64,000 bases of DNA, taken from IMG/VR virus record IMGVR_UViG_3300010403_000705, positions 368,845-432,844 of that record; one strand, 5' to 3'. The notes under the pieces were generated by a model. That model made no database searches. It was not told the DNA's origin and saw only the letters and a program-made list of their open reading frames with translations. Made by a program: the position numbers and the translations under genes. Positions 26,156-56,201 of the stretch are shown here, in pieces (the first letter of the stretch is position 1; the number at the start of each line of letters is the position of its first letter).

Positions 26156-26291
26156 TAAAATGGCAAAATTATGGTTTTTAAAGTTTAAAAAAGATAATCG
26201 ATGTTAAAAAAATAACTAGGACTAAGTTATATCATTATCATTAATTATCTGTTTATCGTTGAAATTTTTGTTCAAATATAAGGAATGTATT

Positions 26292-27851
26292 ATGTCTTCA
26301 AAAAAGTTATTTTCTAATAAGTCTGTGGATGTTAAGTTAGTTAAACCAACTGATACAGTAAATAATGCTGGTGGTCAAGCCTATTCTTTAGATGATAAGG
26401 CAGCCTTGGCTCAATTAGCCATGACGGGATGTTTCAATGGTACTTATTATGTTTCTGATGAAGATCAATTAAAAAAAGTATTAGATTTAGCAAATAAATT
26501 GCCAGCAAAATATGTTGCACAACTAGCTGTTTATTCTCGTCAATATGGTTTAATGAAAGATATGCCAGCAGTTTTGGCAGCGGTAGTGGCAGGTAAGGAT
26601 TCAGATCTTTTATCAAAAATTTTTGATAAGGTAGTAGATTCCCCCAAAATGTTAAGAAATTTTGTACAAATTCTTCGTTCAGGAGTAGTAGGTCGCAAAT
26701 CTTTAGGCACTAGACCTAAGAAATTGGTTCAAAAATACCTTGAATCTTTAACTGACGAACAATTATTTATGGCTGATGTTGGAAACGACCCATCTTTACA
26801 AGATGTAATTAAATTGGTTCATCCTAAACCAACTACCAAACAACGTTCTGCTATGTTTGCATATCTCTTAAATAAAGAATATTCCCAGGATGATTTATCT
26901 TTATTAGTAAGACAATTTGAGGACTTTAAAAAGGACATGTCCAAGGACATTCCTAATGTACCTTTTCAAAAATTAACTGCTTTACCACTTACTTCTGATC
27001 ATTGGAAAAAAATTGCTTCAAATGCCACTTGGAATCAAATCAGACAAAATCTTAATACATTCGCTCGTCATAATGTCTTAAGTGATCAGGCATTATTGAA
27101 TCTTATATGTTCTAGAATAGAGGATAAGGAATTAGTTAAAAGAGCTAGAGTATTTCCTTATCAGCTTTTTACCACGTTTCAAAATTTGGAATCAAGTATA
27201 CCAACTAAGATCTCAGTTGCTTTACAAAAAGCTGCTGAACATGCATTGGAAAATATTCCAGAATTTAAAGGTAAAGTCTATGTTATGGTAGATACTTCTG
27301 GTTCTATGAGTTCGCCAGTGACTGGTAAACGTGGTACAGCTACTACAAAAATGTCTTGCATTGATGTTGCTGCTTTAGTGGCGGCAGCTATAATGAGAAA
27401 AAATTCTGATGTAGAAGTATTACCTTTTGATACTAAAGTTCATACACATAAACTGAATCCACTTGATTCGATTATGACTAATGCAAAGATTTTATCTGCT
27501 TTTGGTGGAGGAGGTACGAATTGTTCTCTTCCATTACAAGAATTGAATCGTAGAAAAGCCATGGGAGATTTAGTTATTTATGTAAGTGATAATGAATCTT
27601 GGGTTGATTCTAGCAGAGGAAAGGGGACTGCAACTATGAATGCTTGGGAAGTTTTTAAAGCTCGTAATAGAAATGCAAAATTAGTTTGTATTGATTTGAC
27701 ACCCAATACTTCTACACAAGTTTATTCTAAAAAAGACGTTCTTAACATCGGAGGTTTCTCAGATTCTGTATTTGAAGTGATAAATAAGTTCATGGAGTAC
27801 GGAAATGACGCAAATCTATGGATTAGAACAATTGAGCAGATTAAACTTTAA
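26292..27851 (+). CDS. Ro60/Rsr TROVE-vWA RNA-binding protein
   Basis: NNAGGQAY, LAQLAMTGCFNGTYY, ARVFPYQL, VDTSGSM MIDAS, GGGGTNCS, SDNESW, IGGFSD. Confidence 0.92.
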   Translation: MSSKKLFSNKSVDVKLVKPTDTVNNAGGQAYSLDDKAALAQLAMTGCFNGTYYVSDEDQLKKVLDLANKLPAKYVAQLAVYSRQYGLMKDMPAVLAAVVAGKDSDLLSKIFDKVVDSPKMLRNFVQILRSGVVGRKSLGTRPKKLVQKYLESLTDEQLFMADVGNDPSLQDVIKLVHPKPTTKQRSAMFAYLLNKEYSQDDLSLLVRQFEDFKKDMSKDIPNVPFQKLTALPLTSDHWKKIASNATWNQIRQNLNTFARHNVLSDQALLNLICSRIEDKELVKRARVFPYQLFTTFQNLESSIPTKISVALQKAAEHALENIPEFKGKVYVMVDTSGSMSSPVTGKRGTATTKMSCIDVAALVAAAIMRKNSDVEVLPFDTKVHTHKLNPLDSIMTNAKILSAFGGGGTNCSLPLQELNRRKAMGDLVIYVSDNESWVDSSRGKGTATMNAWEVFKARNRNAKLVCIDLTPNTSTQVYSKKDVLNIGGFSDSVFEVINKFMEYGNDANLWIRTIEQIKL

Positions 27852-29319: not shown

Positions 29320-30150
29320 ATGATAAAAAGAGATGGTGTTAAGTTAATGAATGCAAGAACTAATAACGTTTCTATTGCCAAAGAAACGCTGGCTATTTTG
29401 AAACAAAAATATTATAATTCTCCCAATGGTAACAAAATAAATATTTCTGAAGCATTGGATGCCGCTGTTAAAGGATCTGTTCTTTATCAAAATGAAATAA
29501 GTTTTGTTGAAAATGAGTCGGTAAAATTACCATTAATAGAAGTTACTCCTGAAACAACTGCTCAAGCAGCACAACGATTATTATGTATACATAAAGATGT
29601 AGTAGTTTTAAATTTTGCTTCTGCTAGAAATCCAGGCGGTGGATTTTTATCTGGTGCTATAGCACAAGAAGAAGATTTATGTCGCTGTTCTGGATTATAT
29701 TCTTGTCTTAAATCTAAGCCAATTTTTTATAATGAAAATATATTATGTGATAATACATATTATACAGATAATATTATTTACTCACCAAATGTTCCATTTT
29801 TTAGAAGCGAACATTTTTTATTTTTAGAAAATCCATTTTGTGTTTCTGTTATAACTGCTCCAGCACCTAATATTAGAGGTATGAATAATATCGATGAAAA
29901 ACAATTATTTGATGTATTGAGTAATAGAATATCTAAAATATTAAAAATTGCTGCATATCATAATCATAAAAATATTATTTTGGGCGCATTTGGATGTGGA
30001 GCATTTGGTAATGATCCATTAATGGTTGCACATATTTTTTTAAATTCTTTGAAAATGTTTAATTATTTTGGAAATGTATGTTTTGCTATTTATTCTAATA
30101 AAGGAGATTTAACTAATTTAAATGCATTTAAAAAAATATTTGATAAATGA
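29320..30150 (+). CDS. TIGR02452 family microbial-type PARG / macrodomain
   Basis: LNFASARNPGGGFLSGAIAQEEDLCRCS, LGAFGCGAFGNDP. Confidence 0.88.
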   Translation: MIKRDGVKLMNARTNNVSIAKETLAILKQKYYNSPNGNKINISEALDAAVKGSVLYQNEISFVENESVKLPLIEVTPETTAQAAQRLLCIHKDVVVLNFASARNPGGGFLSGAIAQEEDLCRCSGLYSCLKSKPIFYNENILCDNTYYTDNIIYSPNVPFFRSEHFLFLENPFCVSVITAPAPNIRGMNNIDEKQLFDVLSNRISKILKIAAYHNHKNIILGAFGCGAFGNDPLMVAHIFLNSLKMFNYFGNVCFAIYSNKGDLTNLNAFKKIFDK

Positions 30151-31348: not shown

Positions 31349-32047
31349 ATGAAAAAAGATTTTACTTCAATTAATGTAGTTTTAGATGCTAGTGGCTCAA
31401 TGGGACGTTTGGTTGATGATACAATTGGTGGTTTTAATAATTTTCTAAAAGACCAACAAGCTCTGGCGGGTGAGGCAACTCTATCTTTATGTTTGTTTAA
31501 TGACGATTATAAATTAATATACGATTATGTACCAATTACTCTAGCACAACCGTTAGATAAAAAAGTTTATAGAGCTTCTGGCGGTACAGCTTTATTAGAT
31601 GCTTTAGGAATTACTATTGATAATGTTGGCAAAAAACTTTCAGAAATGAAAGAAAAAGACAGACCTTCAAAAGTTATTTTTCTGGTTATCACGGATGGTC
31701 AGGAAAATTCTAGTCATTTATTAGGAGAATCAGAAGCTAGCTTGCCTAAATTTGTGCAAGGACAACATAATATTTATAAATGGATTGAAAAAGATAATGA
31801 AATTTTTTATAAAAGAAAGCTACGTTATCCTTTGTCACGCATCAAAGATATGATTACTCATCAGCAACAAAAATATAATTGGGAATTTTTGTATTACGGT
31901 GCTAATGTTAATTCAATAGCTGAAGCAAAAACTTTAGGAATTGTTGCGGCTCGCAGCCAAAGTTATAGTGCTACTTCTGTAGGGACTAAGGATTTATATA
32001 ATAGTATTTCTAATACAGTATTAGACTATAGAACAGGTAAAAAATGA
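31349..32047 (+). CDS. vWA domain protein
   Basis: LDASGSM, GGTALLDA, ITDGQENSS, WEFLYYGAN. Confidence 0.85.
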   Translation: MKKDFTSINVVLDASGSMGRLVDDTIGGFNNFLKDQQALAGEATLSLCLFNDDYKLIYDYVPITLAQPLDKKVYRASGGTALLDALGITIDNVGKKLSEMKEKDRPSKVIFLVITDGQENSSHLLGESEASLPKFVQGQHNIYKWIEKDNEIFYKRKLRYPLSRIKDMITHQQQKYNWEFLYYGANVNSIAEAKTLGIVAARSQSYSATSVGTKDLYNSISNTVLDYRTGKK

Positions 32048-32316: not shown

Positions 32317-32392
32317 GTCTCTGTAGTCTAACGGATAGGGCAACTGCCTTCTAAGCAGTGCGGTGCAAGTTCGAATCTTGCCAGAGGCACCA
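32317..32392 (+). tRNA. tRNA-Arg(TCT)
   Basis: Cloverleaf, loop CTTCTAA, CCA. Confidence 0.93.
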
Positions 32393-32481
32393 ATCTTCAA
32401 TTATCCTGAAGAGATTAATAGAAGGATTAATTAGCAAACCATATTAACTTATGTTTAGGCTAGTAATTGCGGACAGTACAT

Positions 32482-32558
32482 GGAGGAGTAGCTCAGTGAA
32501 AGAGCACGATGCTATAAACATAACGAGGTCCTTGGTTCAAGTCCAAGCTCTTCCACCA
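32482..32558 (+). ncRNA. tRNA-like RNA, bulged anticodon stem (nominal anticodon ATA)
   Basis: Intact acceptor, D and T arms and CCA; anticodon arm CGATG-CTATAAA-CAT-AA-CG. Confidence 0.65.
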
Positions 32559-32573
32559 ATGATCTACAACAAA

Positions 32574-32680
32574 GGCATCCAGGGACACTGAACCCGCTTC
32601 GCAGGTGGGCAGTGCCACCCTCTCTGACAGAGGGGAACGTCACCAGTAACTAGACGTGACACGTTGGAGAGAAAATGTGA
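32574..32680 (+). ncRNA. GC-rich four-hairpin structured RNA
   Basis: CACTG..CCCGC/GTGGG..CAGTG; CCCTCT/AGAGGG; ACGTC/GACGT; CACGTT/AATGTG. Confidence 0.55.
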
Positions 32681-32738
32681 ATGTTAGACCCAAATCACTA
32701 CACATAATAAAATATGCATAAATTGATATATAAATATT

Positions 32739-32812
32739 GGGCTTGTAATTAAATGGGATAATAATTCGTTTGCACCGAATTTTTGAGAGTTCGATTCTCT
32801 CCGGGTCCACCA
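32739..32812 (+). tRNA. tRNA-Ala(TGC)
   Basis: G3:U70, loop TTTGCAC, CCA. Confidence 0.88.
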
Positions 32813-32833
32813 GAATTTAAGGTAAATTTCATT

Positions 32834-33034
32834 ATGAATGTGAAAGATTTGAAGAAAAAGTTAGATGGATTACCCGATAATCTTGAAGTAAAAATTGCTT
32901 ATGGTTGCCAGCTTTTTGAAACGGCAGGTAGTAAAGGTCATACTTTAGACGAGATTCAAGATGTAGTGATAGTGCACCATAACGATTGTATTGATGAAGT
33001 TTGGTTATATAATGAATATGCGTCTGAGGTTTAA
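32834..33034 (+). CDS. Hypothetical phage protein
   Basis: MNVKDLKKKLDGLPDNLEV, a common small phage family. Confidence 0.65.
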   Translation: MNVKDLKKKLDGLPDNLEVKIAYGCQLFETAGSKGHTLDEIQDVVIVHHNDCIDEVWLYNEYASEV

Positions 33035-33221
33035 GTTTTTAAAAATATGAATAAAACAGAACAGTCAGAATTATTAAAAATAAAAGAGTTTTTGGAATCT
33101 CTGTTAGAATCATTATCTAGAAAAGAATTGTTGTACTTTAAAGATAGATTTGAAAAATTAATGATTGAGAATAGTTATTCTGGTTTGTTAGATTCATTTA
33201 ACAAAGATACAAAAAAGTAAT

Positions 33222-33300
33222 GGTGATCGTAGTGTACTGGTTTTGTGCATGACTGACTGTGACTCAGTAGGTGCGGGTTCAAATCCCGTCGATCACCCCA
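33222..33300 (+). tRNA. tRNA-His(GTG)
   Basis: G-1:C73, loop CTGTGAC, CCA. Confidence 0.92.
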
Positions 33301-33324
33301 ATTAGCAATAGTACAGGTAAATTT

Positions 33325-33398
33325 GCCTCGTTCGTCTAATGGTAGGACAAAGCCCTTTCAAGGCTTGAACAGGAGATCGATACTCCTACGAGGTACCA
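33325..33398 (+). tRNA. tRNA-Glu(TTC)
   Basis: Loop CTTTCAA, T-loop ATCGATA, CCA. Confidence 0.9.
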
Positions 33399-33405
33399 AG
33401 TATAT

Positions 33406-33480
33406 TGTGGAGTAGAGCATCGGTAGCTTGCTTGGCTCATAACCAAGAGGTAGGAAGTTCAATTCTTCCCTCCGCAACCA
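33406..33480 (+). tRNA. tRNA-Met(CAT), initiator-like D arm
   Basis: Loop CTCATAA, CCA. Confidence 0.88.
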
Positions 33481-33500
33481 ATAGAAAGACAAACCGTAAA

Positions 33501-33725
33501 ATGAGAAAAACTGGTGTTATAGTATATTCAAATTCTTCAAAAGAAACCGTGGATTACTATTGTGAGGCTCTGAAAAAACATTTTGCAATGCCTCTGTATT
33601 TCGAAATTGAAATGATTAATAATCAATATTCAATTTTGTTTGATCCTTGGGACGGATATCTTGTAAATACTAGTGGATATGTTGATGAAATTAAAAAGTA
33701 TGTGACTAAAATACAAAAAGAATAA
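33501..33725 (+). CDS. Hypothetical protein
   Basis: Start moved to the ATG after the tRNA. Confidence 0.55.
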   Translation: MRKTGVIVYSNSSKETVDYYCEALKKHFAMPLYFEIEMINNQYSILFDPWDGYLVNTSGYVDEIKKYVTKIQKE

Positions 33726-33787
33726 TATGATGACTGTGGACAAAGTTATTATGAGGAACCATTATATGGTTGTGGTGGTTATTAAAA

Positions 33788-33952
33788 ATGTGTGATATTT
33801 GTAATGATGATTCTTTAAATGAAAGCTTCGTTGAAGAACAGAATTTTAAATTCTGGCAACGTTTGAAAAATAAATTAAGCGAAGAAGATTTAGAAAAGAT
33901 GTATCCTAATAAGAATAATGTTGTCATTAAACGTAATGATGATTATCAATAA
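33788..33952 (+). CDS. Small hypothetical protein
   Basis: MCDICN... Confidence 0.4.
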   Translation: MCDICNDDSLNESFVEEQNFKFWQRLKNKLSEEDLEKMYPNKNNVVIKRNDDYQ

Positions 33953-33953
33953 T

Positions 33954-34027
33954 TGGAATATCGTCCAACGGCAGGACAACGGGCTTTGAACCCGTGAATC
34001 TAGGTTCGAATCCTAGTATTCCAGCCA
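33954..34027 (+). tRNA. tRNA-Gln(TTG)
   Basis: U1-A72, loop CTTTGAA, G73, CCA. Confidence 0.93.
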
Positions 34028-34030
34028 ACT

Positions 34031-34246
34031 ATGAGTAGGCTTAAAAGGATAAATATGTCAATAAAAAATGCTGATGAATTGATTGATTTATTTAAAAATA
34101 AATTAAATAAACCATCATTGAAGAAAGACGTACAAATTCTTAAAGAAAGCATAAAGATTATATATGAAGATAAAAATTCAAACAATGAAATTAAAGAGAA
34201 AGCATTGTTAAGTCTACAATATTTACAAGAAAAAACAGAGAACTAA
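34031..34246 (+). CDS. Hypothetical protein
   Basis: 71 aa between RNA genes. Confidence 0.5.
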   Translation: MSRLKRINMSIKNADELIDLFKNKLNKPSLKKDVQILKESIKIIYEDKNSNNEIKEKALLSLQYLQEKTEN

Positions 34247-34255
34247 TTGTTCTTA

Positions 34256-34364
34256 AGCAAGAATAGTTTAATGGTAGAACGCTGGAGTCCATCCAGAAGC
34301 GGTACAAAAAGAATCCACGTGCACTGGGTAAAAAAATTCTTAGGTTCAAATCCTCCTTCTTGCT
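34256..34364 (+). ncRNA. tRNA-shell RNA with enlarged variable region
   Basis: AGCAAGAA/TTCTTGCT, D arm TAGTTTAATGGTAGAAC, CTGGA-GTCCA-TCCAG, ~45-nt insert, AGGTTCAAATCCT. Confidence 0.6.
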
Positions 34365-34365
34365 C

Positions 34366-34435
34366 TATGACGAATGCTAAAATGGGATTACATTTAATTT
34401 ACAAAAACATATCTCATTTAATTTTTGTCGTCATA
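34366..34435 (+). ncRNA. Hairpin RNA, Y-RNA candidate
   Basis: TATGACGA/TCGTCATA and AAATGGGAT/ATCTCATTT stems; 5' strand contains GACGAATG. Confidence 0.35.
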
Positions 34436-34441
34436 ATATTT

Positions 34442-34548
34442 GGGTACGTACCTCAAATATGGATGAGGATCGGAGCGGGGGCGAATTGGTAAAATATTAG
34501 CTAGTCCCGAGCACTCTAAAGTTGTTGGTTCAAATTCAATCGTATCCA
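34442..34548 (+). ncRNA. tRNA-shell RNA with extended bulged anticodon-position stem and G3:U70
   Basis: GGGTACG/CGTATCC-A, CCTC/GAGG D stem, GTTGG-TTCAAAT-TCAAT T arm; ~55-nt central domain. Confidence 0.65.
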
Positions 34549-34669
34549 CTTAGATTTTATGTTCCCTGAAAAAGTATACCCGTTAGTTTGGGCGGAGAAC
34601 ACTATAGCTGAATGCAGATAGGTTTACATCGGAAAAAAATAGACTTATCAAATTTTGTCAGCTTAATAT

Positions 34670-34744
34670 AGAGTAATAGTTTAATGTAAAGAATAGCCTC
34701 ATTAACAGAGGAAGATTTTGGTTTAAATCCAAATTACTCTACCA
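34670..34744 (+). ncRNA. Atypical tRNA (nominal anticodon TAA, short variable loop)
   Basis: AGAGTAA/TTACTCT-ACCA, loop ATTAACA, T-loop TTTAAAT. Confidence 0.6.
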
Positions 34745-34752
34745 CCTATAAT

Positions 34753-34838
34753 GCCGACGTTGAGCAGGTGGTGGGCTCAGTGCGCTGTAAACGCATATCC
34801 TTAAGGACTTGGAGGTTCGATTCCTCTCGGCGGCACCA
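34753..34838 (+). tRNA. tRNA-Tyr(GTA)
   Basis: Loop CTGTAAA, variable arm, CCA. Confidence 0.88.
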
Positions 34839-34964
34839 AGATAAAATTATTTTTATTTGGGGTATAATTAGGTATAACTATAACAAGTTGTAAGAACAAT
34901 ATTTAACTCACTACCGCAATTAAATATTGTACAGACTAAATCTAGCGGTGTTATTAGAGGTTTT

Positions 34965-35393
34965 ATGATAAAGATCAAGAAACTTGAAAAAATAGAAACC
35001 AATCAAATGGGTGATAATTATCTTGACCATTTAGTAACTGTTGATATAGATAGTATTACACATAGAGTTTGGGTAAGTTGTAGTGGTTCTCTAATGCGTA
35101 CCGAGAAGAAATCTTTAAAAGATGTAAGTAAGTTTATCAATGATAAATTAGAAAAGTCATTATATAATGATATCAGTTTTGAACATTGGTTAGGAAATCA
35201 AGGAGATTATGCTGCTCCGTATGTTGTGTTAAAAGCAGGCAATGTTGATAAGGTAGTAGATGATGAGTGTTTTTATCATGAATACCCACGTTTGATATTC
35301 ACTACTCCACCACCTCCTCCAGCAGAACCAAAACAGAAACCAACGAATACTATTAATGACGAAATTAAAAAATCAATTATTAATGTAACTTAA
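34965..35393 (+). CDS. Hypothetical protein with polyproline tract
   Basis: 142 aa; SD GAGG; TPPPPPAEP. Confidence 0.65.
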   Translation: MIKIKKLEKIETNQMGDNYLDHLVTVDIDSITHRVWVSCSGSLMRTEKKSLKDVSKFINDKLEKSLYNDISFEHWLGNQGDYAAPYVVLKAGNVDKVVDDECFYHEYPRLIFTTPPPPPAEPKQKPTNTINDEIKKSIINVT

Positions 35394-35399
35394 TGAAAA

Positions 35400-35428
35400 A
35401 AGTATGGTAGATTTTATCTACCATACTT
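35400..35428. terminator. Inverted repeat / terminator or processing stem
   Basis: AAGTATGGTAGA/TCTACCATACTT. Confidence 0.55.
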
Positions 35429-35435
35429 AATAAAA

Positions 35436-35508
35436 CGGGAATAAAGTGTAGCCTGGTTGCACACGTCGTTTGGGGCGATGTAGGGTGGTTCAAATCCAAT
35501 ATTCCCGA
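35436..35508 (+). tRNA. tRNA-Pro(TGG), 8/4-like
   Basis: CGGGAATA/TATTCCCG, loop TTTGGGG. Confidence 0.8.
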
Positions 35509-35509
35509 C

Positions 35510-35591
35510 TAGATAAAATATGGTGCGGTGACGCCTGTAAATAATTTCTAAAGAAAATTATTTATCCGTTGCAACTACGGTATTTTATCTA
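35510..35591 (+). ncRNA. Cloverleaf-like RNA
   Basis: 11-bp closing stem TAGATAAAATA/TATTTTATCTA enclosing three hairpins, the last CCGT-TGCAACT-ACGG (T-like). Confidence 0.5.
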
Positions 35592-35602
35592 AAAATTATT
35601 AT

Positions 35603-35705
35603 GCACATCTAAAAAGTCTCCAGCAGAACCCCAGGAGGCACGAATCTAAGGAGTAGTGGCAGTCGAATTAACGATAGATACGTTTGAACTTAGAATGTGT
35701 TGTGC
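35603..35705 (+). ncRNA. Multi-branch structured RNA
   Basis: GCACATCTAA/TTAGAATGTGT closing stem, GTCTCC/GGAGGC, ATCTA/TAGAT. Confidence 0.4.
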
Positions 35706-35717
35706 TTAATGATATTT

Positions 35718-35793
35718 CGGGAATGAGGTGTAACTTGGTTGCATGGGAGCTCTGGAAGCTTTTGGAGGCGTTCGAATCGCACATTCCCGACCA
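35718..35793 (+). tRNA. tRNA-Pro(TGG), C33/A37, 8/4-like
   Basis: CGGGAATG/CATTCCCG-ACCA, loop TCTGGAA. Confidence 0.75.
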
Positions 35794-35900
35794 GTAGAGA
35801 GATCGTATTAGCAGATAAAACTTTAGTACGAGTTAAAGGAATTAGTAATATATCTTAAATGATAAATGTTTGGCGGTGCAAGACCCGCCTCTCTACTCCA
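35794..35900 (+). ncRNA. tRNA-shell RNA ending in CCA
   Basis: GTAGAGA/TCTCTAC-TCCA, T-like GGCGG-TGCAAGAC-CCGCC, internal TCGTATTA/TAGTACGA hairpin. Confidence 0.6.
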
Positions 35901-35946
35901 AAACCTAAATTAAAAATCAACACAAACTCATAACAAGGAGCTTATA

Positions 35947-36204
35947 ATGTCAATTGTACTATGGATTCTATTTGGACTTGTAGTTGGTGTTATCGCTAAA
36001 TTATTGACTCCTGGTCGTGAACCTAGTGGATTTGTTTTAACTACTCTATTAGGTATTGGTGGTTCGTTATTGGGAGGATTTCTAGGAAAATTGATTGGTA
36101 TATATCCAACGTACCAATCAACGGGTGGATTTTTTATGGCTATTTTAGGAGCTGTCGTTATACTAGCGATATATAACTCTTTTCTATTTCGTAGAACTTT
36201 TTAA
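35947..36204 (+). CDS. GlsB/YeaQ/YmgE (transglycosylase-associated) membrane protein
   Basis: WILFGLVVGVIAKLLTPG...LGIGGSLLGG...AILGAVVIL. Confidence 0.88.
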   Translation: MSIVLWILFGLVVGVIAKLLTPGREPSGFVLTTLLGIGGSLLGGFLGKLIGIYPTYQSTGGFFMAILGAVVILAIYNSFLFRRTF

Positions 36205-36227
36205 TAAAAAAAGTATTTAAAAATCTT

Positions 36228-36300
36228 CAGAATATGTGGTCTAAGGGCAGGGCAGGTGGAAGTGTTCATCACGTTCAGGTTCGATTCCTGACATATTCTG
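36228..36300 (+). ncRNA. tRNA-like RNA with shrunken anticodon loop
   Basis: CAGAATATG/CATATTCTG, TCAGG-TTCGATT-CCTGA; loop of 4-6 nt; no CCA. Confidence 0.6.
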
Positions 36301-36306
36301 TTTTAT

Positions 36307-36382
36307 CGGGAAATGTTGTAATCTGGTAGCATCCGTGCTCAGGAAGCATGTAGTATGAGTTCAAATCTCGTTTTCCCGACCA
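36307..36382 (+). tRNA. tRNA-Pro(AGG), C33/A37
   Basis: CGGGAAA/TTTCCCG-ACCA, loop TCAGGAA. Confidence 0.8.
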
Positions 36383-36385
36383 TAT

Positions 36386-36494
36386 TGTAATTAAGTGTAA
36401 TGGTGCATCATCTCGATAATGATACGTACGTTCAATTCGTACACTTCCAGTCGGATATAGTAGAGAGAAAAAGGTTCGATTCCTTTAATTACAA
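36386..36494 (+). ncRNA. tRNA-shell RNA with a nested second T-arm
   Basis: TGTAATT/AATTACA, D arm, TCTC/GAGA enclosing GTACG-TTCAATT-CGTAC, outer AAAGG-TTCGATT-CCTTT. Confidence 0.65.
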
Positions 36495-36502
36495 TATACT
36501 AT

Positions 36503-36587
36503 GGATCTGTTCTCTAGCGGCAATGAGAAGAGCCTTTTAAGCTCTCGGCGAAAGCCTACGTGGGTTCGAGTCCCTCCAGATCCACCA
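36503..36587 (+). tRNA. tRNA-Lys(TTT) with long variable arm
   Basis: Loop CTTTTAA, variable stem GGC-GAAA-GCC, CCA. Confidence 0.85.
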
Positions 36588-36674
36588 CATCAAAACGATG
36601 TAGTAAGAAAATGAATATAGATTACGATTTTCTAGATATTATGATGTTACAATATTTGAATAGAGAGATAACAA

Positions 36675-36914
36675 ATGAAGTCAAGGTATATAAATAATTC
36701 TGCAATGAATAGTGCTGAATTTGGAAAATTCATGCAAAGTGAAGAAACTAAAGCCGCCATAGAAGAAGGATATAATATTATTAATATTAAAGGTTATACA
36801 AAAGGCAGTGGATCGGAAGTTTGTTATTGTGTTTCTATGAAAAAACCTTTTTTTAAATTTATTTGTGACGAGATAAATTCTACTATAAGACTATGGTTTA
36901 TGTTAGATAAATAA
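36675..36914 (+). CDS. Hypothetical protein
   Basis: 79 aa ORF. Confidence 0.55.
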   Translation: MKSRYINNSAMNSAEFGKFMQSEETKAAIEEGYNIINIKGYTKGSGSEVCYCVSMKKPFFKFICDEINSTIRLWFMLDK

Positions 36915-36920
36915 TTTTAT

Positions 36921-36995
36921 TCCTACCTAGCTCAATGGTAGAGCGTTCGGCTGTTAACCGAATGGTTCCAGGTTCGAGTCCTGGGGTAGGAGCCA
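36921..36995 (+). tRNA. tRNA-Asn(GTT)
   Basis: Canonical cloverleaf, G73, CCA. Confidence 0.95.
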
Positions 36996-37003
36996 ATAAA
37001 TAG

Positions 37004-37096
37004 CATGGAGGATACCAGCAGCGAGAGCAGCTTACCTTAAGTGGCAACTGGATAAAATCTTCCCAAAGTAGTTTGCTCAAACTACATAGATCCATG
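37004..37096 (+). ncRNA. Structured RNA between tRNAs
   Basis: CATGGA/TCCATG, CCAG/CTGG, GTAGTTT-GCTC-AAACTAC. Confidence 0.4.
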
Positions 37097-37125
37097 ATAT
37101 AACATGGTTATACTATTTATTCTAT

Positions 37126-37201
37126 GGTACGTTAGCTGGCTTGGTGCAGCGCCCGCCTGTTAAGCGGATGACGGAGGGTTCAATTCCCTCACGTATCGCC
37201 A
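37126..37201 (+). tRNA. tRNA-Asn(GTT), second type
   Basis: Loop CTGTTAA, G73, CCA. Confidence 0.88.
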
Positions 37202-37251
37202 TCATGATTTGTGAATAAAATATATTCATATAATGATATATAATTAGAAAT

Positions 37252-37326
37252 AGCTTCATCGTTCAATGGTTAGGACACTGGCTTGTCACGTCAGTAATGA
37301 GGGTTCGATTCCCTTTGGAGCTGCCA
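37252..37326 (+). tRNA. tRNA-Asp(GTC)
   Basis: Loop TTGTCAC, CCA. Confidence 0.92.
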
Positions 37327-37421
37327 ATAAACATAATTAGGTATGTAGTAATTTTATAATGTTTATTCCCAGAACTTATCACTAGTCAAGGCAAAGTATA
37401 GTAATAATAATTCATTACAAT

Positions 37422-37739
37422 ATGAATATTTCTCAATTATGCAAATTAGCAGACAAGTTTGAAGAAAAAATTAAATTAGCTACTGCTAGTAATAGTTGCT
37501 CACGTTGTAATGATATTCATTGTTGTATGAATTTTGGTAATTCTCATAGTCTAGATCAAGATAATAATGAGGCAAAATGTGAGGGTTACAAAAAATCTCC
37601 TGTAGGATCTCCGAGACAAAGATCTTTTTGTGCAAGACATTGTGCTATGAAAAAACAAAGAACTTCTATAGAAGTTGCAAATGATCCAGAATCTTGTATT
37701 AATAAAGGTTTAAGGCGTTGGAAATGCCGTTGTGGTTGA
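37422..37739 (+). CDS. DUF6321-like Cys-rich phage protein
   Basis: RQRSFCAR...DPESCINKGLRRWKC. Confidence 0.6.
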   Translation: MNISQLCKLADKFEEKIKLATASNSCSRCNDIHCCMNFGNSHSLDQDNNEAKCEGYKKSPVGSPRQRSFCARHCAMKKQRTSIEVANDPESCINKGLRRWKCRCG

Positions 37740-37769
37740 TATAAAACAACTACATAAATAGTGATATAT

Positions 37770-37845
37770 AGGTGTGTAGCAATTCGGCAATTGCACTTGC
37801 TTGTCAAGCAAGACCAAGCGGGATCGACACCCGTCATGCCTGCCA
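37770..37845 (+). tRNA. tRNA-Asp(GTC), second type
   Basis: Loop TTGTCAA, T-loop ATCGACA, CCA. Confidence 0.85.
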
Positions 37846-37848
37846 TAT

Positions 37849-37924
37849 AGTCCATTAGCTCAGGGGTTAGAGCGCCTGTCTTATAAACAGGAAGTCGTTG
37901 GTTCAATTCCAACATGGACTACCA
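37849..37924 (+). tRNA. tRNA-Ile(TAT)
   Basis: Loop CTTATAA, CCA. Confidence 0.9.
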
Positions 37925-38100
37925 TATTATACTAAAAACGCAAGATTGCGATACTATAAAATTGGAGTGTCAATCATGAAAAAAGTCATCAATAACTTGA
38001 TGTGTTCGCTATGCTATCTGCTACCATTACACAATACAAAATATTGTGTTTGTCCATGTCATTGGGATTAAATATTAGTACATAATAATATTTCATACAT

Positions 38101-38322
38101 ATGAAAAAAATGCAAGATTGTGATTTTGTCGTAGGTTTTAATAATAAAGGAATCTATGTTTTAAAAGATAGAAATTCATTTTCAGATGAAATTGCTATAA
38201 CATTTCAAGAATTTTTTCATAGATTATCTGATTATTCTTTATATTTAGAGCCAATAAAGATATTCGAGCCTCTAATACAATTTATGTATAAAAAAATTAT
38301 CTCGTTGAAATGTTTTTTATAA
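38101..38322 (+). CDS. Hypothetical protein with C-terminal F-x motif
   Basis: Ends KKIISLKCFL*. Confidence 0.6.
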   Translation: MKKMQDCDFVVGFNNKGIYVLKDRNSFSDEIAITFQEFFHRLSDYSLYLEPIKIFEPLIQFMYKKIISLKCFL

Positions 38323-38330
38323 AATAAAAT

Positions 38331-38579
38331 GCGATTGTGGTGAAAGAGGAAAACACACCATCAAAAATGTTAAAAGAAGATGGCATATTAAAAATGGCAT
38401 CATAGTATTTTTTAATATAAGCTTTATAAGGTGATGCCTAGGAAAGATATATTTATAAAATATGTAACGGGTTTGCGGAAGCACCGGACAGGGTTTTGAC
38501 AAGTTCTGTAGGGAAGCGCGTTTGCCTAATAGTTATAGTGTGATGTTATATACGGGTTCAAATCCCGTCAATCGCACCA
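38331..38579 (+). ncRNA. 249-nt tRNA-shell RNA with pseudoknotted insert
   Basis: GCGATTG/CAATCGC-ACCA, D arm, ACGGG-TTCAAAT-CCCGT; ~190-nt structured insert. Confidence 0.75.
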
Positions 38580-38715
38580 TTTTGCAAATTTAGGATATAT
38601 GATGCATTATAATATAATAAATGCTCATAATGAAATTGTGCATATTAAGAGATATAAAGTAAGAAGAAGTATGATAGAGAAATTGGTATAAGTAGAATAC
38701 AATAATTTAAGTTAT

Positions 38716-38792
38716 CGTCCTTTAGCTCATTTGGTTAGAGCGCCGTTCTGATAAGGCGGAGGTGCTGGGATCGTAGCCCAGGAGGACGACCA
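38716..38792 (+). tRNA. tRNA-Ile(GAT)
   Basis: Loop CTGATAA, T-loop ATCGTAG, CCA. Confidence 0.9.
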
Positions 38793-38805
38793 ATTAGAAA
38801 ATAAC

Positions 38806-38881
38806 GGCACTGTCGTATTTGTGGTCAAGACTCGGGTCTGAAAAGCCCAGAAAAGCGGATCGTTACCGCTCGGTGCCGCCA
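38806..38881 (+). tRNA. tRNA-Phe(GAA), divergent
   Basis: Loop CTGAAAA, T-loop ATCGTTA, G73, CCA. Confidence 0.8.
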
Positions 38882-38884
38882 TTA

Positions 38885-38961
38885 GGGTTTGTAACTCAAT
38901 TGGAAGCAGTAGCTGGCTCTTAACCAGTGTTGTGAGAGTTCGAGTCTCTCCAGACCCACCA
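38885..38961 (+). tRNA. tRNA-Lys(CTT)
   Basis: Loop CTCTTAA, CCA. Confidence 0.9.
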
Positions 38962-47070: not shown

Positions 47071-47438
47071 ATATAGTTGGTTAAGATAATCGCTGCCAAT
47101 TTTAATTGGGAGAGGAAGTTCCGAACACCAATAAAGCAGAGTGCCAGTTAACGGCTGGGTGCAGTGATGCAACTGAAAGTGTAACAGAAAATAAACCGCC
47201 TGTAAAGGTAAGGGTGAAATGGTGAAAAATGGCGAACTAAGAGTGCGCCATGTGTAAGAGACCACCGCATATTTGGTAACAAATATGGCAATACAAACCA
47301 CACTCGGTGCAAGACAAATAGAAAACGTTTGAGAATCGCTTATTCGATGTTTTCGGGTTGTTGCTTGATCCAAATAGTGATATTTGGACTAGATTAATGA
47401 TTATCCTAGACAGAATTCGGGCTACTTATTAACTATAT
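47071..47438 (+). ncRNA. rnpB: RNase P RNA (bacterial type A-like)
   Basis: GAGGAAGTTCCG(AAC), GAAAGTGTAACAGAAA, AGGGTGAAA, GTGCAAGAC, ACAGAATTCGGGCTA; P1 ATATAGTTGGT/ATTAACTATAT. Confidence 0.92.
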
Positions 47439-47472
47439 TTCTTTTATAAAAGTTATCTAAAACATCAATACC

Positions 47473-48141
47473 ATGAAAATACCTCTTATTTATCCCAAAA
47501 TTCCTAATGGTAATAATTGCACTCTTAAAGAATGTACCGCTTTTGAGAAATTAGATGGCACCAATATTCATTTTGTATGGGAAAAATTGGCGTACCAAAT
47601 ATTAGGAAACGGGTGGGTTTCTTTTGGTACAAGGCGTGATAGTTTTTCTTTGGAAACAAAAGAAATAGATAATTTTGTATTTAAACATCCAAATTTGAAA
47701 TTGGTTATACCAGATTTTGAGGATAGATTAAGTGAAGATTTAAATAAAAAATTTGGTTCTTCTAATTATGAGAGAGTCCGTTTGTTTACAGAGTTCTTAG
47801 GAGCCAATTCTTTTGCGGGCACACATGATAAAAATGAAAAACAATATCATACAATAATAGATTTGCAAATAGATCAGCAATTAGGCGATAATTCTTTTCT
47901 TGATCCAAAATCATTTATTAATGGGTATAAAATGTTTGGTATACCAAAAGTAGTATACCAGGGTAAATATACTGGGCAATTTGTACAAGATGTGAGGACT
48001 GGAAAATATTTAGTTAATGAGGGTGTAGTTTGTAAAGGTATTGTAGATAATAAAATCTATAGAGTAAAAATTAAAACTGATGCTTATTTAAGAAAATTGA
48101 AAAACGTATTTCATAATTCTTGGCAAGATTATTGGGAATAA
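47473..48141 (+). CDS. RNA ligase-like nucleotidyltransferase
   Basis: YPKI, FEKLDGTN (motif I), EGVVCK, KIK. Confidence 0.75.
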   Translation: MKIPLIYPKIPNGNNCTLKECTAFEKLDGTNIHFVWEKLAYQILGNGWVSFGTRRDSFSLETKEIDNFVFKHPNLKLVIPDFEDRLSEDLNKKFGSSNYERVRLFTEFLGANSFAGTHDKNEKQYHTIIDLQIDQQLGDNSFLDPKSFINGYKMFGIPKVVYQGKYTGQFVQDVRTGKYLVNEGVVCKGIVDNKIYRVKIKTDAYLRKLKNVFHNSWQDYWE

Positions 48142-55566: not shown

Positions 55567-55872
55567 ATGACCATACCCAGTATAATACTTTCAGAAATTT
55601 ATGATTTGTTATGTAGCTATAATGAATGTCCAAAGATATCCAAAGAAACATTTGTGGGTTGGTATGCCAAAGGTCATATTTACACTATCAGTATTCAATT
55701 AAGAACTTTAGTATTTACATGTGTAAAACCATTTTCTTGTTCTGTAATTCAGGATGATTTGGAGTTATCAAATAATAATACCGAATTAATGCCTCAAAGT
55801 CAGTTAGATGAATTAAACGAAAAACTTTCTTTGTTTTCTTCAAGATTCTATAGAGTAAAAGTTTTTTGGTAA
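55567..55872 (+). CDS. Hypothetical protein with C-terminal F-x motif
   Basis: EIYDLLCSYN...RFYRVKVFW*. Confidence 0.65.
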   Translation: MTIPSIILSEIYDLLCSYNECPKISKETFVGWYAKGHIYTISIQLRTLVFTCVKPFSCSVIQDDLELSNNNTELMPQSQLDELNEKLSLFSSRFYRVKVFW

Positions 55873-55877
55873 ATTAT

Positions 55878-56201
55878 ATGAATAATAAAAAACAAATTCG
55901 TAAAATTTTTCGTGATGCTTGTCTTAGAAGAGATGATTATAAATGTGTCATTTGTGGTATGAAATCATCACAAGAATTGGCAGAAAAAGAGTTAGATGTA
56001 CATCATATTACTAATAGAAAAGATATTGTAAATGGTGGTTATGTTAAAGAAAATGGTATTTCTTTATGCGGCGCCTGTCACATGAAAGCAGAGAGTTTTC
56101 ATTCTACTGGAATTGCTCTTCCTGGATATTCTATAAATGAACTATATGAAGCTATCAAATCTTCTTTAGGAGCAGCTCAATTAGCTAGTTCGAGATTATG
56201 A
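55878..56201 (+). CDS. HNH endonuclease
   Basis: RDDYKCVICG, DVHHI, NGISLCGACH. Confidence 0.85.
   Translation: MNNKKQIRKIFRDACLRRDDYKCVICGMKSSQELAEKELDVHHITNRKDIVNGGYVKENGISLCGACHMKAESFHSTGIALPGYSINELYEAIKSSLGAAQLASSRL

What the first reader, a model, noticed from the sequence alone, without database searches (positions are those of the whole stretch)
36386..36494. tRNA-like RNA containing two T-arms
Seen: a perfect GTACG-TTCAATT-CGTAC T-arm sits inside the anticodon stem and is followed by ACTT-CCA. TACACTT could alternatively pair with the 5' AAGTGTA, giving a second, smaller CCA-ended fold. Inference: a bistable or double-elbow mimic, or a tRNA-in-tRNA recombination relic.
Basis: partly seen in the sequence, partly recalled or inferred. 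Interest (0 to 1): 0.6.

Follow-up and report, generated by a model that had tools for sequence, protein, structure and literature searches.

The report
Mosaic tRNA relic with two T-arms
In the tRNA gene array of a 433-kb soil phage, this 109-base stretch is a tRNA-shaped shell holding the leftover T-arm of a former asparagine tRNA gene; it is most likely a recombination scar, not a new RNA switch, and whether it is made or used is untested.

Summary
Window 36386-36494 has a perfect 7-bp acceptor stem, a weak D arm and a canonical T-arm (36470-36486). It passes the Rfam tRNA model only narrowly (31.8 bits, cut-off 29). In place of an anticodon arm it has 54 nt. These hold a 5-bp hairpin and a second perfect T-arm (36426-36442), followed by ACUU-CCA.

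T-arm motifs of this kind occur about 3 times per 433 kb per strand outside tRNA-like calls, so the inner one is not chance. Its 25-nt core (36418-36442) is 88% identical to the variable loop plus T-arm of an intact tRNA-Asn(GUU). That gene lies in the matching interval of the closest relative, a 446-kb phage. A degenerate pattern of this core hit no other record among 2.9 million viral contigs.

The composite has no homologue in the relatives, in metagenome contigs or in 185,579 prokaryote genomes. Most ordinary tRNAs of the array are 74-97% conserved in the relatives. ARAGORN never calls the element. It lacks the encoded CCA of nearly all its neighbours and has A8 and U37.

Bistability or a double-elbow function is neither supported nor excluded, because no RNA data exist.

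The parts
36386..36392 (+). 5' strand of the outer acceptor stem (UGUAAUU)
   Evidence: Perfect 7-bp pairing with 36487-36493. It also pairs 5 of 7 with ACUUCCA at 36443-36449.
36393..36408 (+). A8-A9 and the D-arm-like region (GUGU-AAUGGU-GCAU) with the GG of a D loop
   Evidence: The Rfam tRNA alignment places the D arm here. The stem has only 3-4 bp including G-U pairs. A stands at position 8 where tRNAs have U.
36407..36423 (+). Perfect 5-bp hairpin AUCAU-CUCGAUA-AUGAU at the anticodon-arm position. The loop has U33 but U at position 37.
   Evidence: Sequence and constrained folds. The Rfam model does not align it as an anticodon arm.
36418..36442 (+). Segment homologous to the variable loop plus T-arm of the relative's tRNA-Asn(GUU)
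   Evidence: 22 of 25 identical to G002:C1:423286-423358. The score is 35, against shuffles of 18.8 +/- 2.5. A degenerate 25-mer hits only that relative among viral contigs.
36426..36442 (+). Inner T-arm GUACG-UUCAAUU-CGUAC
   Evidence: Perfect stem with a canonical T-loop. The motif background is about 3 per 433 kb per strand.
36443..36449 (+). It is 5 of 7 identical to the true acceptor 3' strand AAUUACA.
   Evidence: UACACUU (36440-36446) also pairs with AAGUGUA (36393-36399).
36450..36469 (+). Purine-rich spacer (GUCGGAUAUAGUAGAGAGAA) with no recognisable relative
   Evidence: No match in the own genome or in relatives.
36470..36486 (+). Outer T-arm AAAGG-UUCGAUU-CCUUU
   Evidence: Rfam tRNA alignment and motif scan.
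36487..36494 (+). Acceptor 3' strand AAUUACA plus discriminator A. No encoded CCA; followed by UAUACUAU.
   Evidence: Nearly all canonical tRNAs of the array encode CCA.
36307..36382 (+). Flanking tRNA-Pro(AGG) with encoded CCA, 3 nt upstream of the element
   Evidence: It is 91% identical in the relative G002.
36503..36587 (+). Flanking tRNA-Lys(UUU) with an extra arm and encoded CCA, 8 nt downstream
   Evidence: It is 95% identical in G002.

Best explanation
The element is a lineage-specific, mosaic tRNA-derived gene in the tRNA array of a 433-kb soil phage. A tRNA shell (acceptor stem, weak D arm, T-arm) encloses at least 25 nt left over from a tRNA-Asn(GUU) gene, namely its variable loop and T-arm. 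That gene is still intact at the matching place in the closest relative.

Shown:
- the anatomy of the element;
- the homology of the inner T-arm segment to the relative's tRNA-Asn;
- the absence of the composite from every relative and every collection searched.

Inferred:
- Recombination or deletion within the fast-changing array removed the 5' two-thirds of the Asn gene and left its 3' module inside, or fused to, another tRNA-like gene.
- The element lies 3 nt after tRNA-Pro and 8 nt before tRNA-Lys, so it would be co-transcribed with them. Processing of its neighbours (RNase P, 3' trimming) would release it as a fragment of roughly 110-120 nt.
- It does not decode. The 'CCA' is internal sequence, not a 3' end.
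For: - The Rfam tRNA model matches only the acceptor stem, D arm and T-arm (31.8 bits, cut-off 29). It skips 54 nt where the anticodon arm should be.
- ARAGORN does not call the element by default, with introns allowed, or at an 80% threshold that adds about 100 further calls, most of them probably spurious.
- It departs from working tRNAs: A8, U37, a 3-4-bp D stem, a 46-nt variable region, and no encoded CCA although nearly all array tRNAs have one.
- The inner segment 36418-36442 is 88% identical to the variable loop plus T-arm of the G002 tRNA-Asn. That is the only significant similarity between the two matching intervals (score 35; shuffles 18.8 +/- 2.5, maximum 27).
- The degenerate 25-mer AATGATAYGTACGTTCRAWTCGTAC hits only that relative among 2.9 million viral contigs.
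- G002 has the order Pro cluster, ORF, Asn, Asn, Asn. G000 has the element where the first Asn would be.
- The composite has no homologue by blastn, by a covariance model built from it, by exact patterns in viral, metagenome and genome collections, or through neighbouring proteins.
- Thirteen of the 21 ordinary-length tRNA(-like) genes of the array match G002 or G001 at 74-97% over most of their length. None of the three over-long tRNA-likes does.
- Folding energy is unremarkable.
Against: - All four helices (22 bp) are perfect Watson-Crick pairs. An old, neutrally decaying relic should show mismatches.
- The Asn-derived piece has diverged no more (88%) than working tRNAs have between the two phages.
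- The 7-bp alternative helix followed by CCA arises in only 0.56% of shuffles.
- The parent of the outer shell could not be identified.
- A control showed that best-hit alignment scores of this size are common between unrelated tRNAs. The Asn link therefore rests on 25 nt plus database-wide specificity and synteny.
- No RNA data exist, so expression and function are untested.
Confidence: 0.6

Rival explanations
1. It is a functional, non-decoding tRNA-like small RNA. The tRNA shell gives processing by RNase P and protection from nucleases. The inner module, with a free T-loop 'second elbow' or an alternative CCA-ended fold, binds a partner. Candidates are the phage's own Ro60 protein (a Y-RNA-like role), a tRNA-binding enzyme, or a host tRNA-targeting defence protein (a decoy).
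For: - All helices are perfect, and the element is packed between two tRNAs, so it should be transcribed and excised.
- The phage encodes an RNase P RNA, a Ro60/TROVE protein, a VWA protein and an RNA ligase in the same window. Ro60, VWA and a tRNA array are also neighbours in Myxococcus phage Mx1.
- Bacterial and phage Y RNAs mimic tRNA (PMC4201824). T4 makes two small RNAs of unknown role from its tRNA region (PMC3014915).
- Two further tRNA shells with large inserts lie in the same array (34257-34364 and 38331-38579).
- Helix plus CCA is rare in shuffles.
Against: - It is not conserved in the closest relatives, which do keep Ro60, the RNase P RNA and most tRNAs.
- It has no GNCGAAN0-1G Ro-binding motif and no hit to any Rfam family other than tRNA at or near that family's threshold.
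- It lies 8.5 kb from Ro60, against the usual 4 kb or less (PMC4201824).
- The three long shells share no sequence and none is conserved.
- The fold is no more stable than shuffles.
Confidence: 0.2
2. It is a decoding tRNA. Either it is a type-II-like tRNA with a giant variable arm (anticodon CGA in the loop CUCGAUA), or it is a tRNA-Gly(UCC) whose anticodon arm forms only after about 28 nt are removed.
For: - It passes the Rfam tRNA gathering score.
- The hairpin at the anticodon position has a 7-nt loop with U33.
- ARAGORN finds no tRNA-Gly, tRNA-Val or tRNA-Ser(UCN) in the genome.
- Deleting 28 nt (about 36414-36441) makes ARAGORN call tRNA-Gly(UCC) with the canonical loop CUUCCAG.
- Other tRNAs of this phage carry unusual extra arms, for example Lys(UUU).
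Against: - It has U37, A8, a 3-bp D stem and a 46-nt variable region, about twice the longest I know of (own knowledge).
- It lacks the encoded CCA.
- Its acceptor stem and discriminator (U1-A72, A73) do not fit Ser or Gly identity rules (own knowledge).
- The 'spliced' anticodon stem has a C-C mismatch and a G-U pair, and the cut would lie in the 5' strand of the anticodon stem, not at position 37/38.
- I know of no splicing system in bacteria or phages for such a short insert (own knowledge).
- It is not conserved.
Confidence: 0.08
3. It is not a real feature: a chance resemblance or an assembly chimera between repeated tRNA sequences.
For: It is a singleton from one soil metagenome. tRNA arrays are repeat-rich.
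Against: - A second assembler's 84.5-kb contig agrees base for base, as do the JGI and ENA contigs.
- The T-arm motif background is about 7e-6 per nt.
- The tRNA model gives E = 2e-5.
Confidence: 0.03

Closest known systems
Canonical and type II (long-variable-arm) tRNAs, Rfam RF00005
   Same: 7-bp acceptor stem, D loop with GG, canonical T-arm adjacent to the acceptor 3' strand, position within a tRNA array, and a score over the gathering threshold.
   Different: No alignable anticodon arm. The region between the anticodon-position hairpin and the T-arm is 46 nt and contains a second complete T-arm. It has A8 and U37, no encoded CCA, and is not called by ARAGORN.
tRNA pseudogenes, chimeric tRNA genes and partial 3' tRNA copies left by recombination or integration at tRNA genes (own knowledge)
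   Same: A fragment running from the anticodon-stem 3' side through the T-arm of one tRNA (Asn) sits next to or inside another tRNA-like gene. It is lineage-specific and lies in a rearranging array.
   Different: The fragment is nested inside an otherwise intact tRNA shell rather than lying beside a complete gene. No integrase, direct repeats or island borders were seen.
YrlA / Y RNAs of bacteria and phages that bind Ro60 (PMC4201824)
   Same: A tRNA-mimicking small RNA in a genome that encodes Ro60. It has a T-arm and a D-arm-like module. Y RNAs can be cut by RNase P and receive CCA.
   Different: YrlA has the order T-arm, closed acceptor-like hairpin, D arm, with the free ends forming the Ro-binding stem and a GNCGAAN0-1G motif. 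Here the order is that of a tRNA, the motif is absent, no Rfam family other than tRNA matches, and the distance to Ro60 is 8.5 kb.
T4 RNAC and RNAD, small stable RNAs from the T4 tRNA region with unknown roles (PMC3014915)
   Same: A non-tRNA small RNA gene embedded in a phage tRNA cluster and presumably processed with the tRNAs.
   Different: No sequence relation was tested, because no T4 sequence was fetched. Those RNAs are known to be expressed. Here expression is unknown.

Membership tests
tRNA (RF00005) | Score at or above the curated gathering threshold | tested here: met
   31.8 bits against 29, E = 2e-5. This holds only through local skipping of 54 nt at the anticodon arm.
tRNA (RF00005) | 7-bp acceptor stem directly followed 5' by the T-arm, and a canonical T-loop | tested here: met
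   UGUAAUU/AAUUACA is perfect, with AAAGG-UUCGAUU-CCUUU adjacent.
tRNA (RF00005) | Anticodon arm: 5-bp stem and 7-nt loop with U33 and a purine at position 37 | tested here: not met
   The hairpin AUCAU-CUCGAUA-AUGAU has U33 but U at 37. Infernal does not align it as the anticodon arm.
tRNA (RF00005) | Variable region of 4-5 nt (class I) or a single extra arm of roughly 10-24 nt (class II); size ranges are own knowledge | tested here: not met
   46 nt (36424-36469) containing a full T-arm plus a 27-nt tail.
tRNA (RF00005) | Core tertiary nucleotides (U8, A14, G18-G19) and a 4-bp D stem | tested here: inconclusive
   A14 and GG are present. Position 8 is A. The D stem has 3-4 bp with G-U pairs and overlaps the next hairpin.
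tRNA (RF00005) | Called by an independent cloverleaf finder | tested here: not met
   No ARAGORN call by default, with introns allowed, or at an 80% threshold.
Working tRNAs of this phage's array | Encoded 3' CCA and conservation in related phages | tested here: not met
   No CCA follows 36494, whereas 18 of the 20 ARAGORN-called tRNA genes between 32317 and 38961 encode it. No homologue in G001-G003.
Intron-containing tRNA | Insert at position 37/38 (or another defined site) whose removal gives a sound cloverleaf, plus a known splicing route | tested here: not met
   ARAGORN -i makes no call. Of all 15-69-nt deletions, only 28-30-nt ones give a call, with a mismatched stem and a cut inside the stem. 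No group I intron match by Rfam.
YrlA / Y RNA | GNCGAAN0-1G motif near the 5' end, the order T-arm / acceptor-like hairpin / D arm, and location within 4 kb of Ro60 on the same strand | tested here: not met
   The motif is absent from the element. The order is that of a tRNA. It lies 8.5 kb downstream of Ro60, on the same strand. No Y-RNA family hit.
YrlA / Y RNA | Binding to Ro60 | not testable with these tools
   This needs immunoprecipitation or an in vitro binding assay.
Recombination relic / mosaic tRNA gene | A part shows specific homology to a different, intact tRNA gene at the syntenic place in a relative | tested here: met
   36418-36442 matches the G002 tRNA-Asn at 22 of 25 positions. 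It is the only significant match in the interval and the only viral-contig hit of the degenerate pattern.
Recombination relic / mosaic tRNA gene | The composite is absent from relatives (lineage-specific) | tested here: met
Recombination relic / mosaic tRNA gene | Signs of decay (mismatched helices) | tested here: not met
   All 22 bp of the four helices are Watson-Crick pairs. Either the event is recent or the structure is maintained.

The most novel reading that the evidence does not exclude
The element, perhaps with the two other tRNA shells carrying large inserts in this array, is a deliberate tRNA-scaffolded small RNA. The phage's own RNase P RNA and the tRNA-processing enzymes would excise it. 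It would then present a second, unpaired T-loop elbow, or switch to a CCA-ended fold, to engage a partner such as the phage Ro60 protein or a host tRNA-targeting defence protein. That would make it a new class of phage tRNA mimic built from recycled tRNA parts.
Probability: 0.12. Interest if true: 0.7.

Novelty: new member of a known kind. Interest (0 to 1): 0.3.

Why it matters
If it is a relic, it is a clean snapshot of how very large phage tRNA arrays rearrange. One tRNA's 3' module is nested in another tRNA shell, while the intact parent gene survives in a sister phage. It also warns that model-based tRNA counts in such phages include non-decoding mosaics.

If it were functional, it would be a natural 'tRNA scaffold' RNA in a phage that also carries RNase P RNA, Ro60, tmRNA and EF-G. 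That would bear on how such phages manage or protect the tRNA pool.

As it stands it is a singleton with no expression data, so the practical value is modest.

Tried and rejected
- **Y RNA / YrlA.** No Rfam hit in the window, in G002/G001 or in Mx1, and no Ro-binding motif. Kept only as part of the speculative reading.
- **Intron.** ARAGORN -i and an exhaustive deletion scan gave only a poor Gly/Trp cloverleaf.
- **Parentage of the 5' half.** Local alignments pointed to the phage's own tRNA-Thr(GGU) (z = 5), and the D arm resembles those of the neighbouring Pro tRNAs. A control showed such best-hit scores are common between unrelated tRNAs, so I make no claim.
- **The 13-bp perfect inverted repeat (36382-36394 / 36485-36497).** It looked like terminal repeats of a mobile element. 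It is explained as 7 bp of acceptor stem, plus A8A9:UU, plus the 'A-UAU' trailer that recurs after several tRNAs of the array.
- **A 7-nt match (GCAUCAU) to the 5' flank of the G002 Asn gene.** It would fit a simple deletion but is below chance level.
- **Searches for any copy elsewhere**. Only the source contig and its re-assemblies were found.
- **Expression.** The only run holding the DNA is a soil DNA metagenome. The read lay-down confirmed the sequence only.
- **Promoter and terminator scan.** Uninformative.
- **Not used.** Protein structure and complex prediction, because no protein claim is made.

Full report
**Context.** The window is bases 368845-432844 of a 432,844-bp IMG/VR virus record estimated 97% complete. 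G+C is about 31% and nearly all genes are on the + strand. The source is a soil metagenome.
- The genome gives 41 matches to the Rfam tRNA model and has a tmRNA and a tRNA with anticodon CUA.
- The window itself holds a class A RNase P RNA (247 bits), a Ro60/TROVE protein, a PARG, an EF-G and an RNA ligase.
- The finding lies in a dense tRNA array (32317-38961). It sits 3 nt after tRNA-Pro(AGG) and 8 nt before a tRNA-Lys(UUU) that carries an extra arm.

**The observation.** With index 1 = 36386, the parts are:
- acceptor stem 1-7/102-108, perfect;
- A8 and A9;
- a weak D arm containing GG;
- a perfect 5-bp hairpin with loop CUCGAUA (22-38);
- two nucleotides;
- a perfect T-arm GUACG-UUCAAUU-CGUAC (41-57);
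- ACUUCCA (58-64);
- a 20-nt purine-rich spacer;
- a second perfect T-arm AAAGG-UUCGAUU-CCUUU (85-101);
- the acceptor 3' strand and discriminator A (109).

No CCA follows, although nearly all canonical tRNAs of the array encode CCA. It actually sits in the variable-region position. AAGUGUA (8-14) does pair perfectly with UACACUU (55-61). This helix is compatible with the outer acceptor stem and competes only with the D stem and the inner T-arm.

**Is it more than chance?**
- The motif 'five Watson-Crick pairs around TTCRANY' occurs 28 times on the + strand of the genome. Of these, 25 fall in tRNA-like calls and 3 outside. The - strand has only 3. A hit inside a 54-nt insert is expected about 4 times in 10,000.
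- The shell reaches 31.8 bits with the Rfam tRNA model (cut-off 29, E about 2e-5). The alignment uses only the acceptor stem, D arm and outer T-arm and skips 54 nt where 18 anticodon-arm positions should be.
- ARAGORN never calls the element, even at a threshold that adds about 100 further calls, most of them probably spurious.
- A 7-bp helix followed by (N)CCA appears in 0.56% of dinucleotide shuffles.
- Overall folding energy is ordinary (z = -0.8). The alternative folds lie within about 2 kcal/mol of one another.
- A different assembler's 84.5-kb contig from what may be the source sample agrees at every base. The feature is therefore not an artefact of one assembly.

**Relatives.** A search with the Ro60 protein found three related viral contigs. 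One is a complete 446,541-bp phage (G002, Ro60 81% identical). The others are a 33.6-kb fragment (G001) and an 8.8-kb fragment (G003).
- G002 and G001 carry the same kind of tRNA array. Thirteen of the 21 ordinary-length tRNA(-like) genes of the G000 array match G002 or G001 at 74-97% over most of their length. Examples are Lys(UUU) 95%, Pro(UGG) 97%, Asn 96% and Pro(AGG) 91%.
- The element has no counterpart by blastn on whole records.
- A covariance model built from the element and its four helices finds only itself in G000 and nothing in G001-G003 at E up to 10.
- Exact patterns in viral contigs, metagenome contigs and 185,579 prokaryote genomes found only the source contig.
- Look-ups through the neighbouring small proteins found only the same phage.
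There are no homologues of the composite at all.

**Origin of the inner T-arm.**
- The one significant similarity between the G000 interval 36383-36502 and the matching G002 interval (after the Pro cluster, up to the Asn genes) is a 25-nt stretch. Element 36418-36442 (AAUGAUAC-GUACG-UUCAAUU-CGUAC) aligns with AAUGAUAU-GUACG-UUCGAAU-CGUAC. The latter is the end of the anticodon stem, the variable loop and the T-arm of an intact G002 tRNA-Asn(GUU), which scores 58.5 bits with the tRNA model.
- That alignment scores 35, against shuffles of 18.8 +/- 2.5 with a maximum of 27.
- A degenerate pattern covering both versions hits only G002 among 2.9 million viral contigs. The signature is thus specific to these two sister phages.
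- G000 has no intact gene with this T-arm.
- I take the inner T-arm to be what is left of the G000 orthologue of that tRNA-Asn.
- Caution: a control showed that generic best-hit alignment scores of this size are common between unrelated tRNAs. The claim rests on the 25-nt identity, its database-wide specificity and the synteny, not on the alignment score alone.
- For the same reason I make no claim about the parent of the 5' half. It resembles the phage's tRNA-Thr(GGU) and the D arms of the neighbouring Pro tRNAs, but not beyond background.

**A further reading of the anatomy.**
- The 5' acceptor strand UGUAAUU pairs 7 of 7 with the distal AAUUACA and 5 of 7 with the proximal ACUUCCA. The two 3' strands are 5 of 7 identical.
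- One 5' half therefore faces two alternative 3' modules, each made of a T-arm plus an acceptor 3' strand. The 'CCA' is part of the first module, not a free end.
- The 13-bp perfect inverted repeat found is the acceptor stem, plus two pairs that invade the outer T-stem, plus the 'A-UAU' trailer that recurs after several tRNAs here. It is not evidence of a mobile element.

**Mechanism, as far as it can be inferred.**
- The element is wedged between two tRNA genes with no promoter or terminator signal of note. It should be transcribed with them and released when RNase P cuts at the 5' end of tRNA-Lys and the 3' end of tRNA-Pro is trimmed.
- RNase P may also recognise the shell itself. The phage encodes its own RNase P RNA, conserved in G002 at 288 bits.
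- I think decoding is unlikely for these reasons: A8, U37, a 3-4-bp D stem, a 46-nt variable region, no CCA, no identity elements for Ser or Gly (own knowledge), and no conservation.
- Removing 28 nt makes ARAGORN call a tRNA-Gly(UCC) with the canonical loop CUUCCAG, and the genome lacks a called tRNA-Gly. However, the stem is mismatched, the cut would fall inside the stem, and I know of no splicing route for it.

**The case for a function.**
- For: the helices are flawless, the Asn-derived piece has diverged no more than working tRNAs, and the array holds two other tRNA shells with large inserts (34257-34364, 38331-38579). The phage also carries Ro60, whose bacterial and phage partners are tRNA-mimicking Y RNAs (PMC4201824). 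T4 makes two small RNAs of unknown role from its tRNA region (PMC3014915).
- Against: none of the three long shells is conserved in G002 or G001. They share no sequence. The Ro-binding motif and the YrlA order of arms are absent, and no RNA family other than tRNA matches.
- Relatives also carry their own unrelated over-long tRNA-likes, with inserts in the D loop or the anticodon loop. This looks like ongoing turnover in these arrays rather than a conserved class.

**Verdict.** The best explanation is a lineage-specific mosaic tRNA remnant (0.6). A functional tRNA-like RNA gets 0.2, a decoding tRNA 0.08 and an artefact 0.03. Interest is modest. It is a tidy example of tRNA-array turnover in a very large phage, and a caution for tRNA counts. 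It would become interesting only if RNA data or further genomes showed that the composite is maintained.

Noticed in passing
window 47073-47440 (+): The phage encodes a bacterial class A RNase P RNA (247.5 bits, full length), directly upstream of an RNA ligase ORF (47473-48141). It is conserved in the 446-kb relative (G002:C1:411691-412037, 288 bits). None of the ten top-ranked papers in a library search on 'RNase P RNA', 'phage-encoded' and 'jumbo phage' contained the term 'RNase P RNA'.
   Followed up: partly
window 26259-27851 (+) and 31349-32047 (+): A Ro60/TROVE orthologue and a weak, sub-threshold VWA-domain match (20.5 bits, Pfam cut-off 23.8) sit beside the tRNA array. Ro60, an annotated VWA protein and a tRNA array are also neighbours in Myxococcus phage Mx1 (Ro60 47% identical). 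No Y RNA (YrlA) was detected by Rfam in any of these loci, so the RNA partner is unknown.
   Followed up: partly
window 34257-34364 (+): A 108-nt tRNA-like gene (38.7 bits) with a 41-nt insert after the anticodon stem, a 5-nt or irregular anticodon loop containing UCC, Gly-like G1-C72/C2-G71/U73, and no CCA. Together with a small ORF (34056-34247), it is an insertion relative to G002 and G001, between tRNA-Gln and a conserved spacer.
   Followed up: partly
window 38331-38579 (+): A 249-nt element with a perfect tRNA acceptor stem (GCGAUUG/CAAUCGC), a T-arm and an encoded CCA around roughly 175 nt of unknown sequence. ARAGORN with introns calls it tRNA-Gly(GCC) with a 160-nt intron. It has no Rfam match and no homologue in relatives. 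Folding z = -1.9.
   Followed up: partly
window 36503-36587 (+): tRNA-Lys(UUU) with a 12-nt extra arm (GGC-GAAA-GCC), unusual for tRNA-Lys. It is 95% conserved in G002 and 79% in G001. G001 also has a long-armed Lys(CUU).
   Followed up: no
window 36229-36300 (+): A tRNA-like gene that ARAGORN reports with a 2-nt 'anticodon' (irregular loop) and no CCA. It has a 76% identical counterpart in G002, so this odd tRNA is conserved, unlike the finding.
   Followed up: no
window 34460-34555, 35723-35797, 32560-32680, 37000-37100 (+): Further uncalled tRNA-like or structured stretches lie between the array's tRNAs. One is a third Pro-type tRNA with acceptor CGGGAAU, a CCA and an irregular anticodon loop (35723-35797). 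Another is a G+C-rich spacer (32560-32680).
   Followed up: no
genome G000:C1:58637-58710, 55645-55997, 306861-307973: A tRNA with anticodon CUA (would read UAG), a tmRNA, and an ARAGORN call of tRNA-Thr(UGU) with a 1016-nt intron (a possible intron; not checked). ARAGORN calls no tRNA-Gly, Val or Ser(UCN) anywhere in the genome.
   Followed up: no
G001:C1:16350-16461; G002:C1:37860-37993; G002:C1:49495-49592: The relatives have their own over-long tRNA-model hits: a 40-nt insert in the D loop (G001), a roughly 55-nt insert in the anticodon loop (G002), and a 98-nt form with a 76% match in G000 at 323568-323641.
   Followed up: partly
window 57713-59794 (+), 29320-30150 (+): A full-length EF-G homologue and a microbial-type poly(ADP-ribose) glycohydrolase are encoded by the phage.
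   Followed up: no
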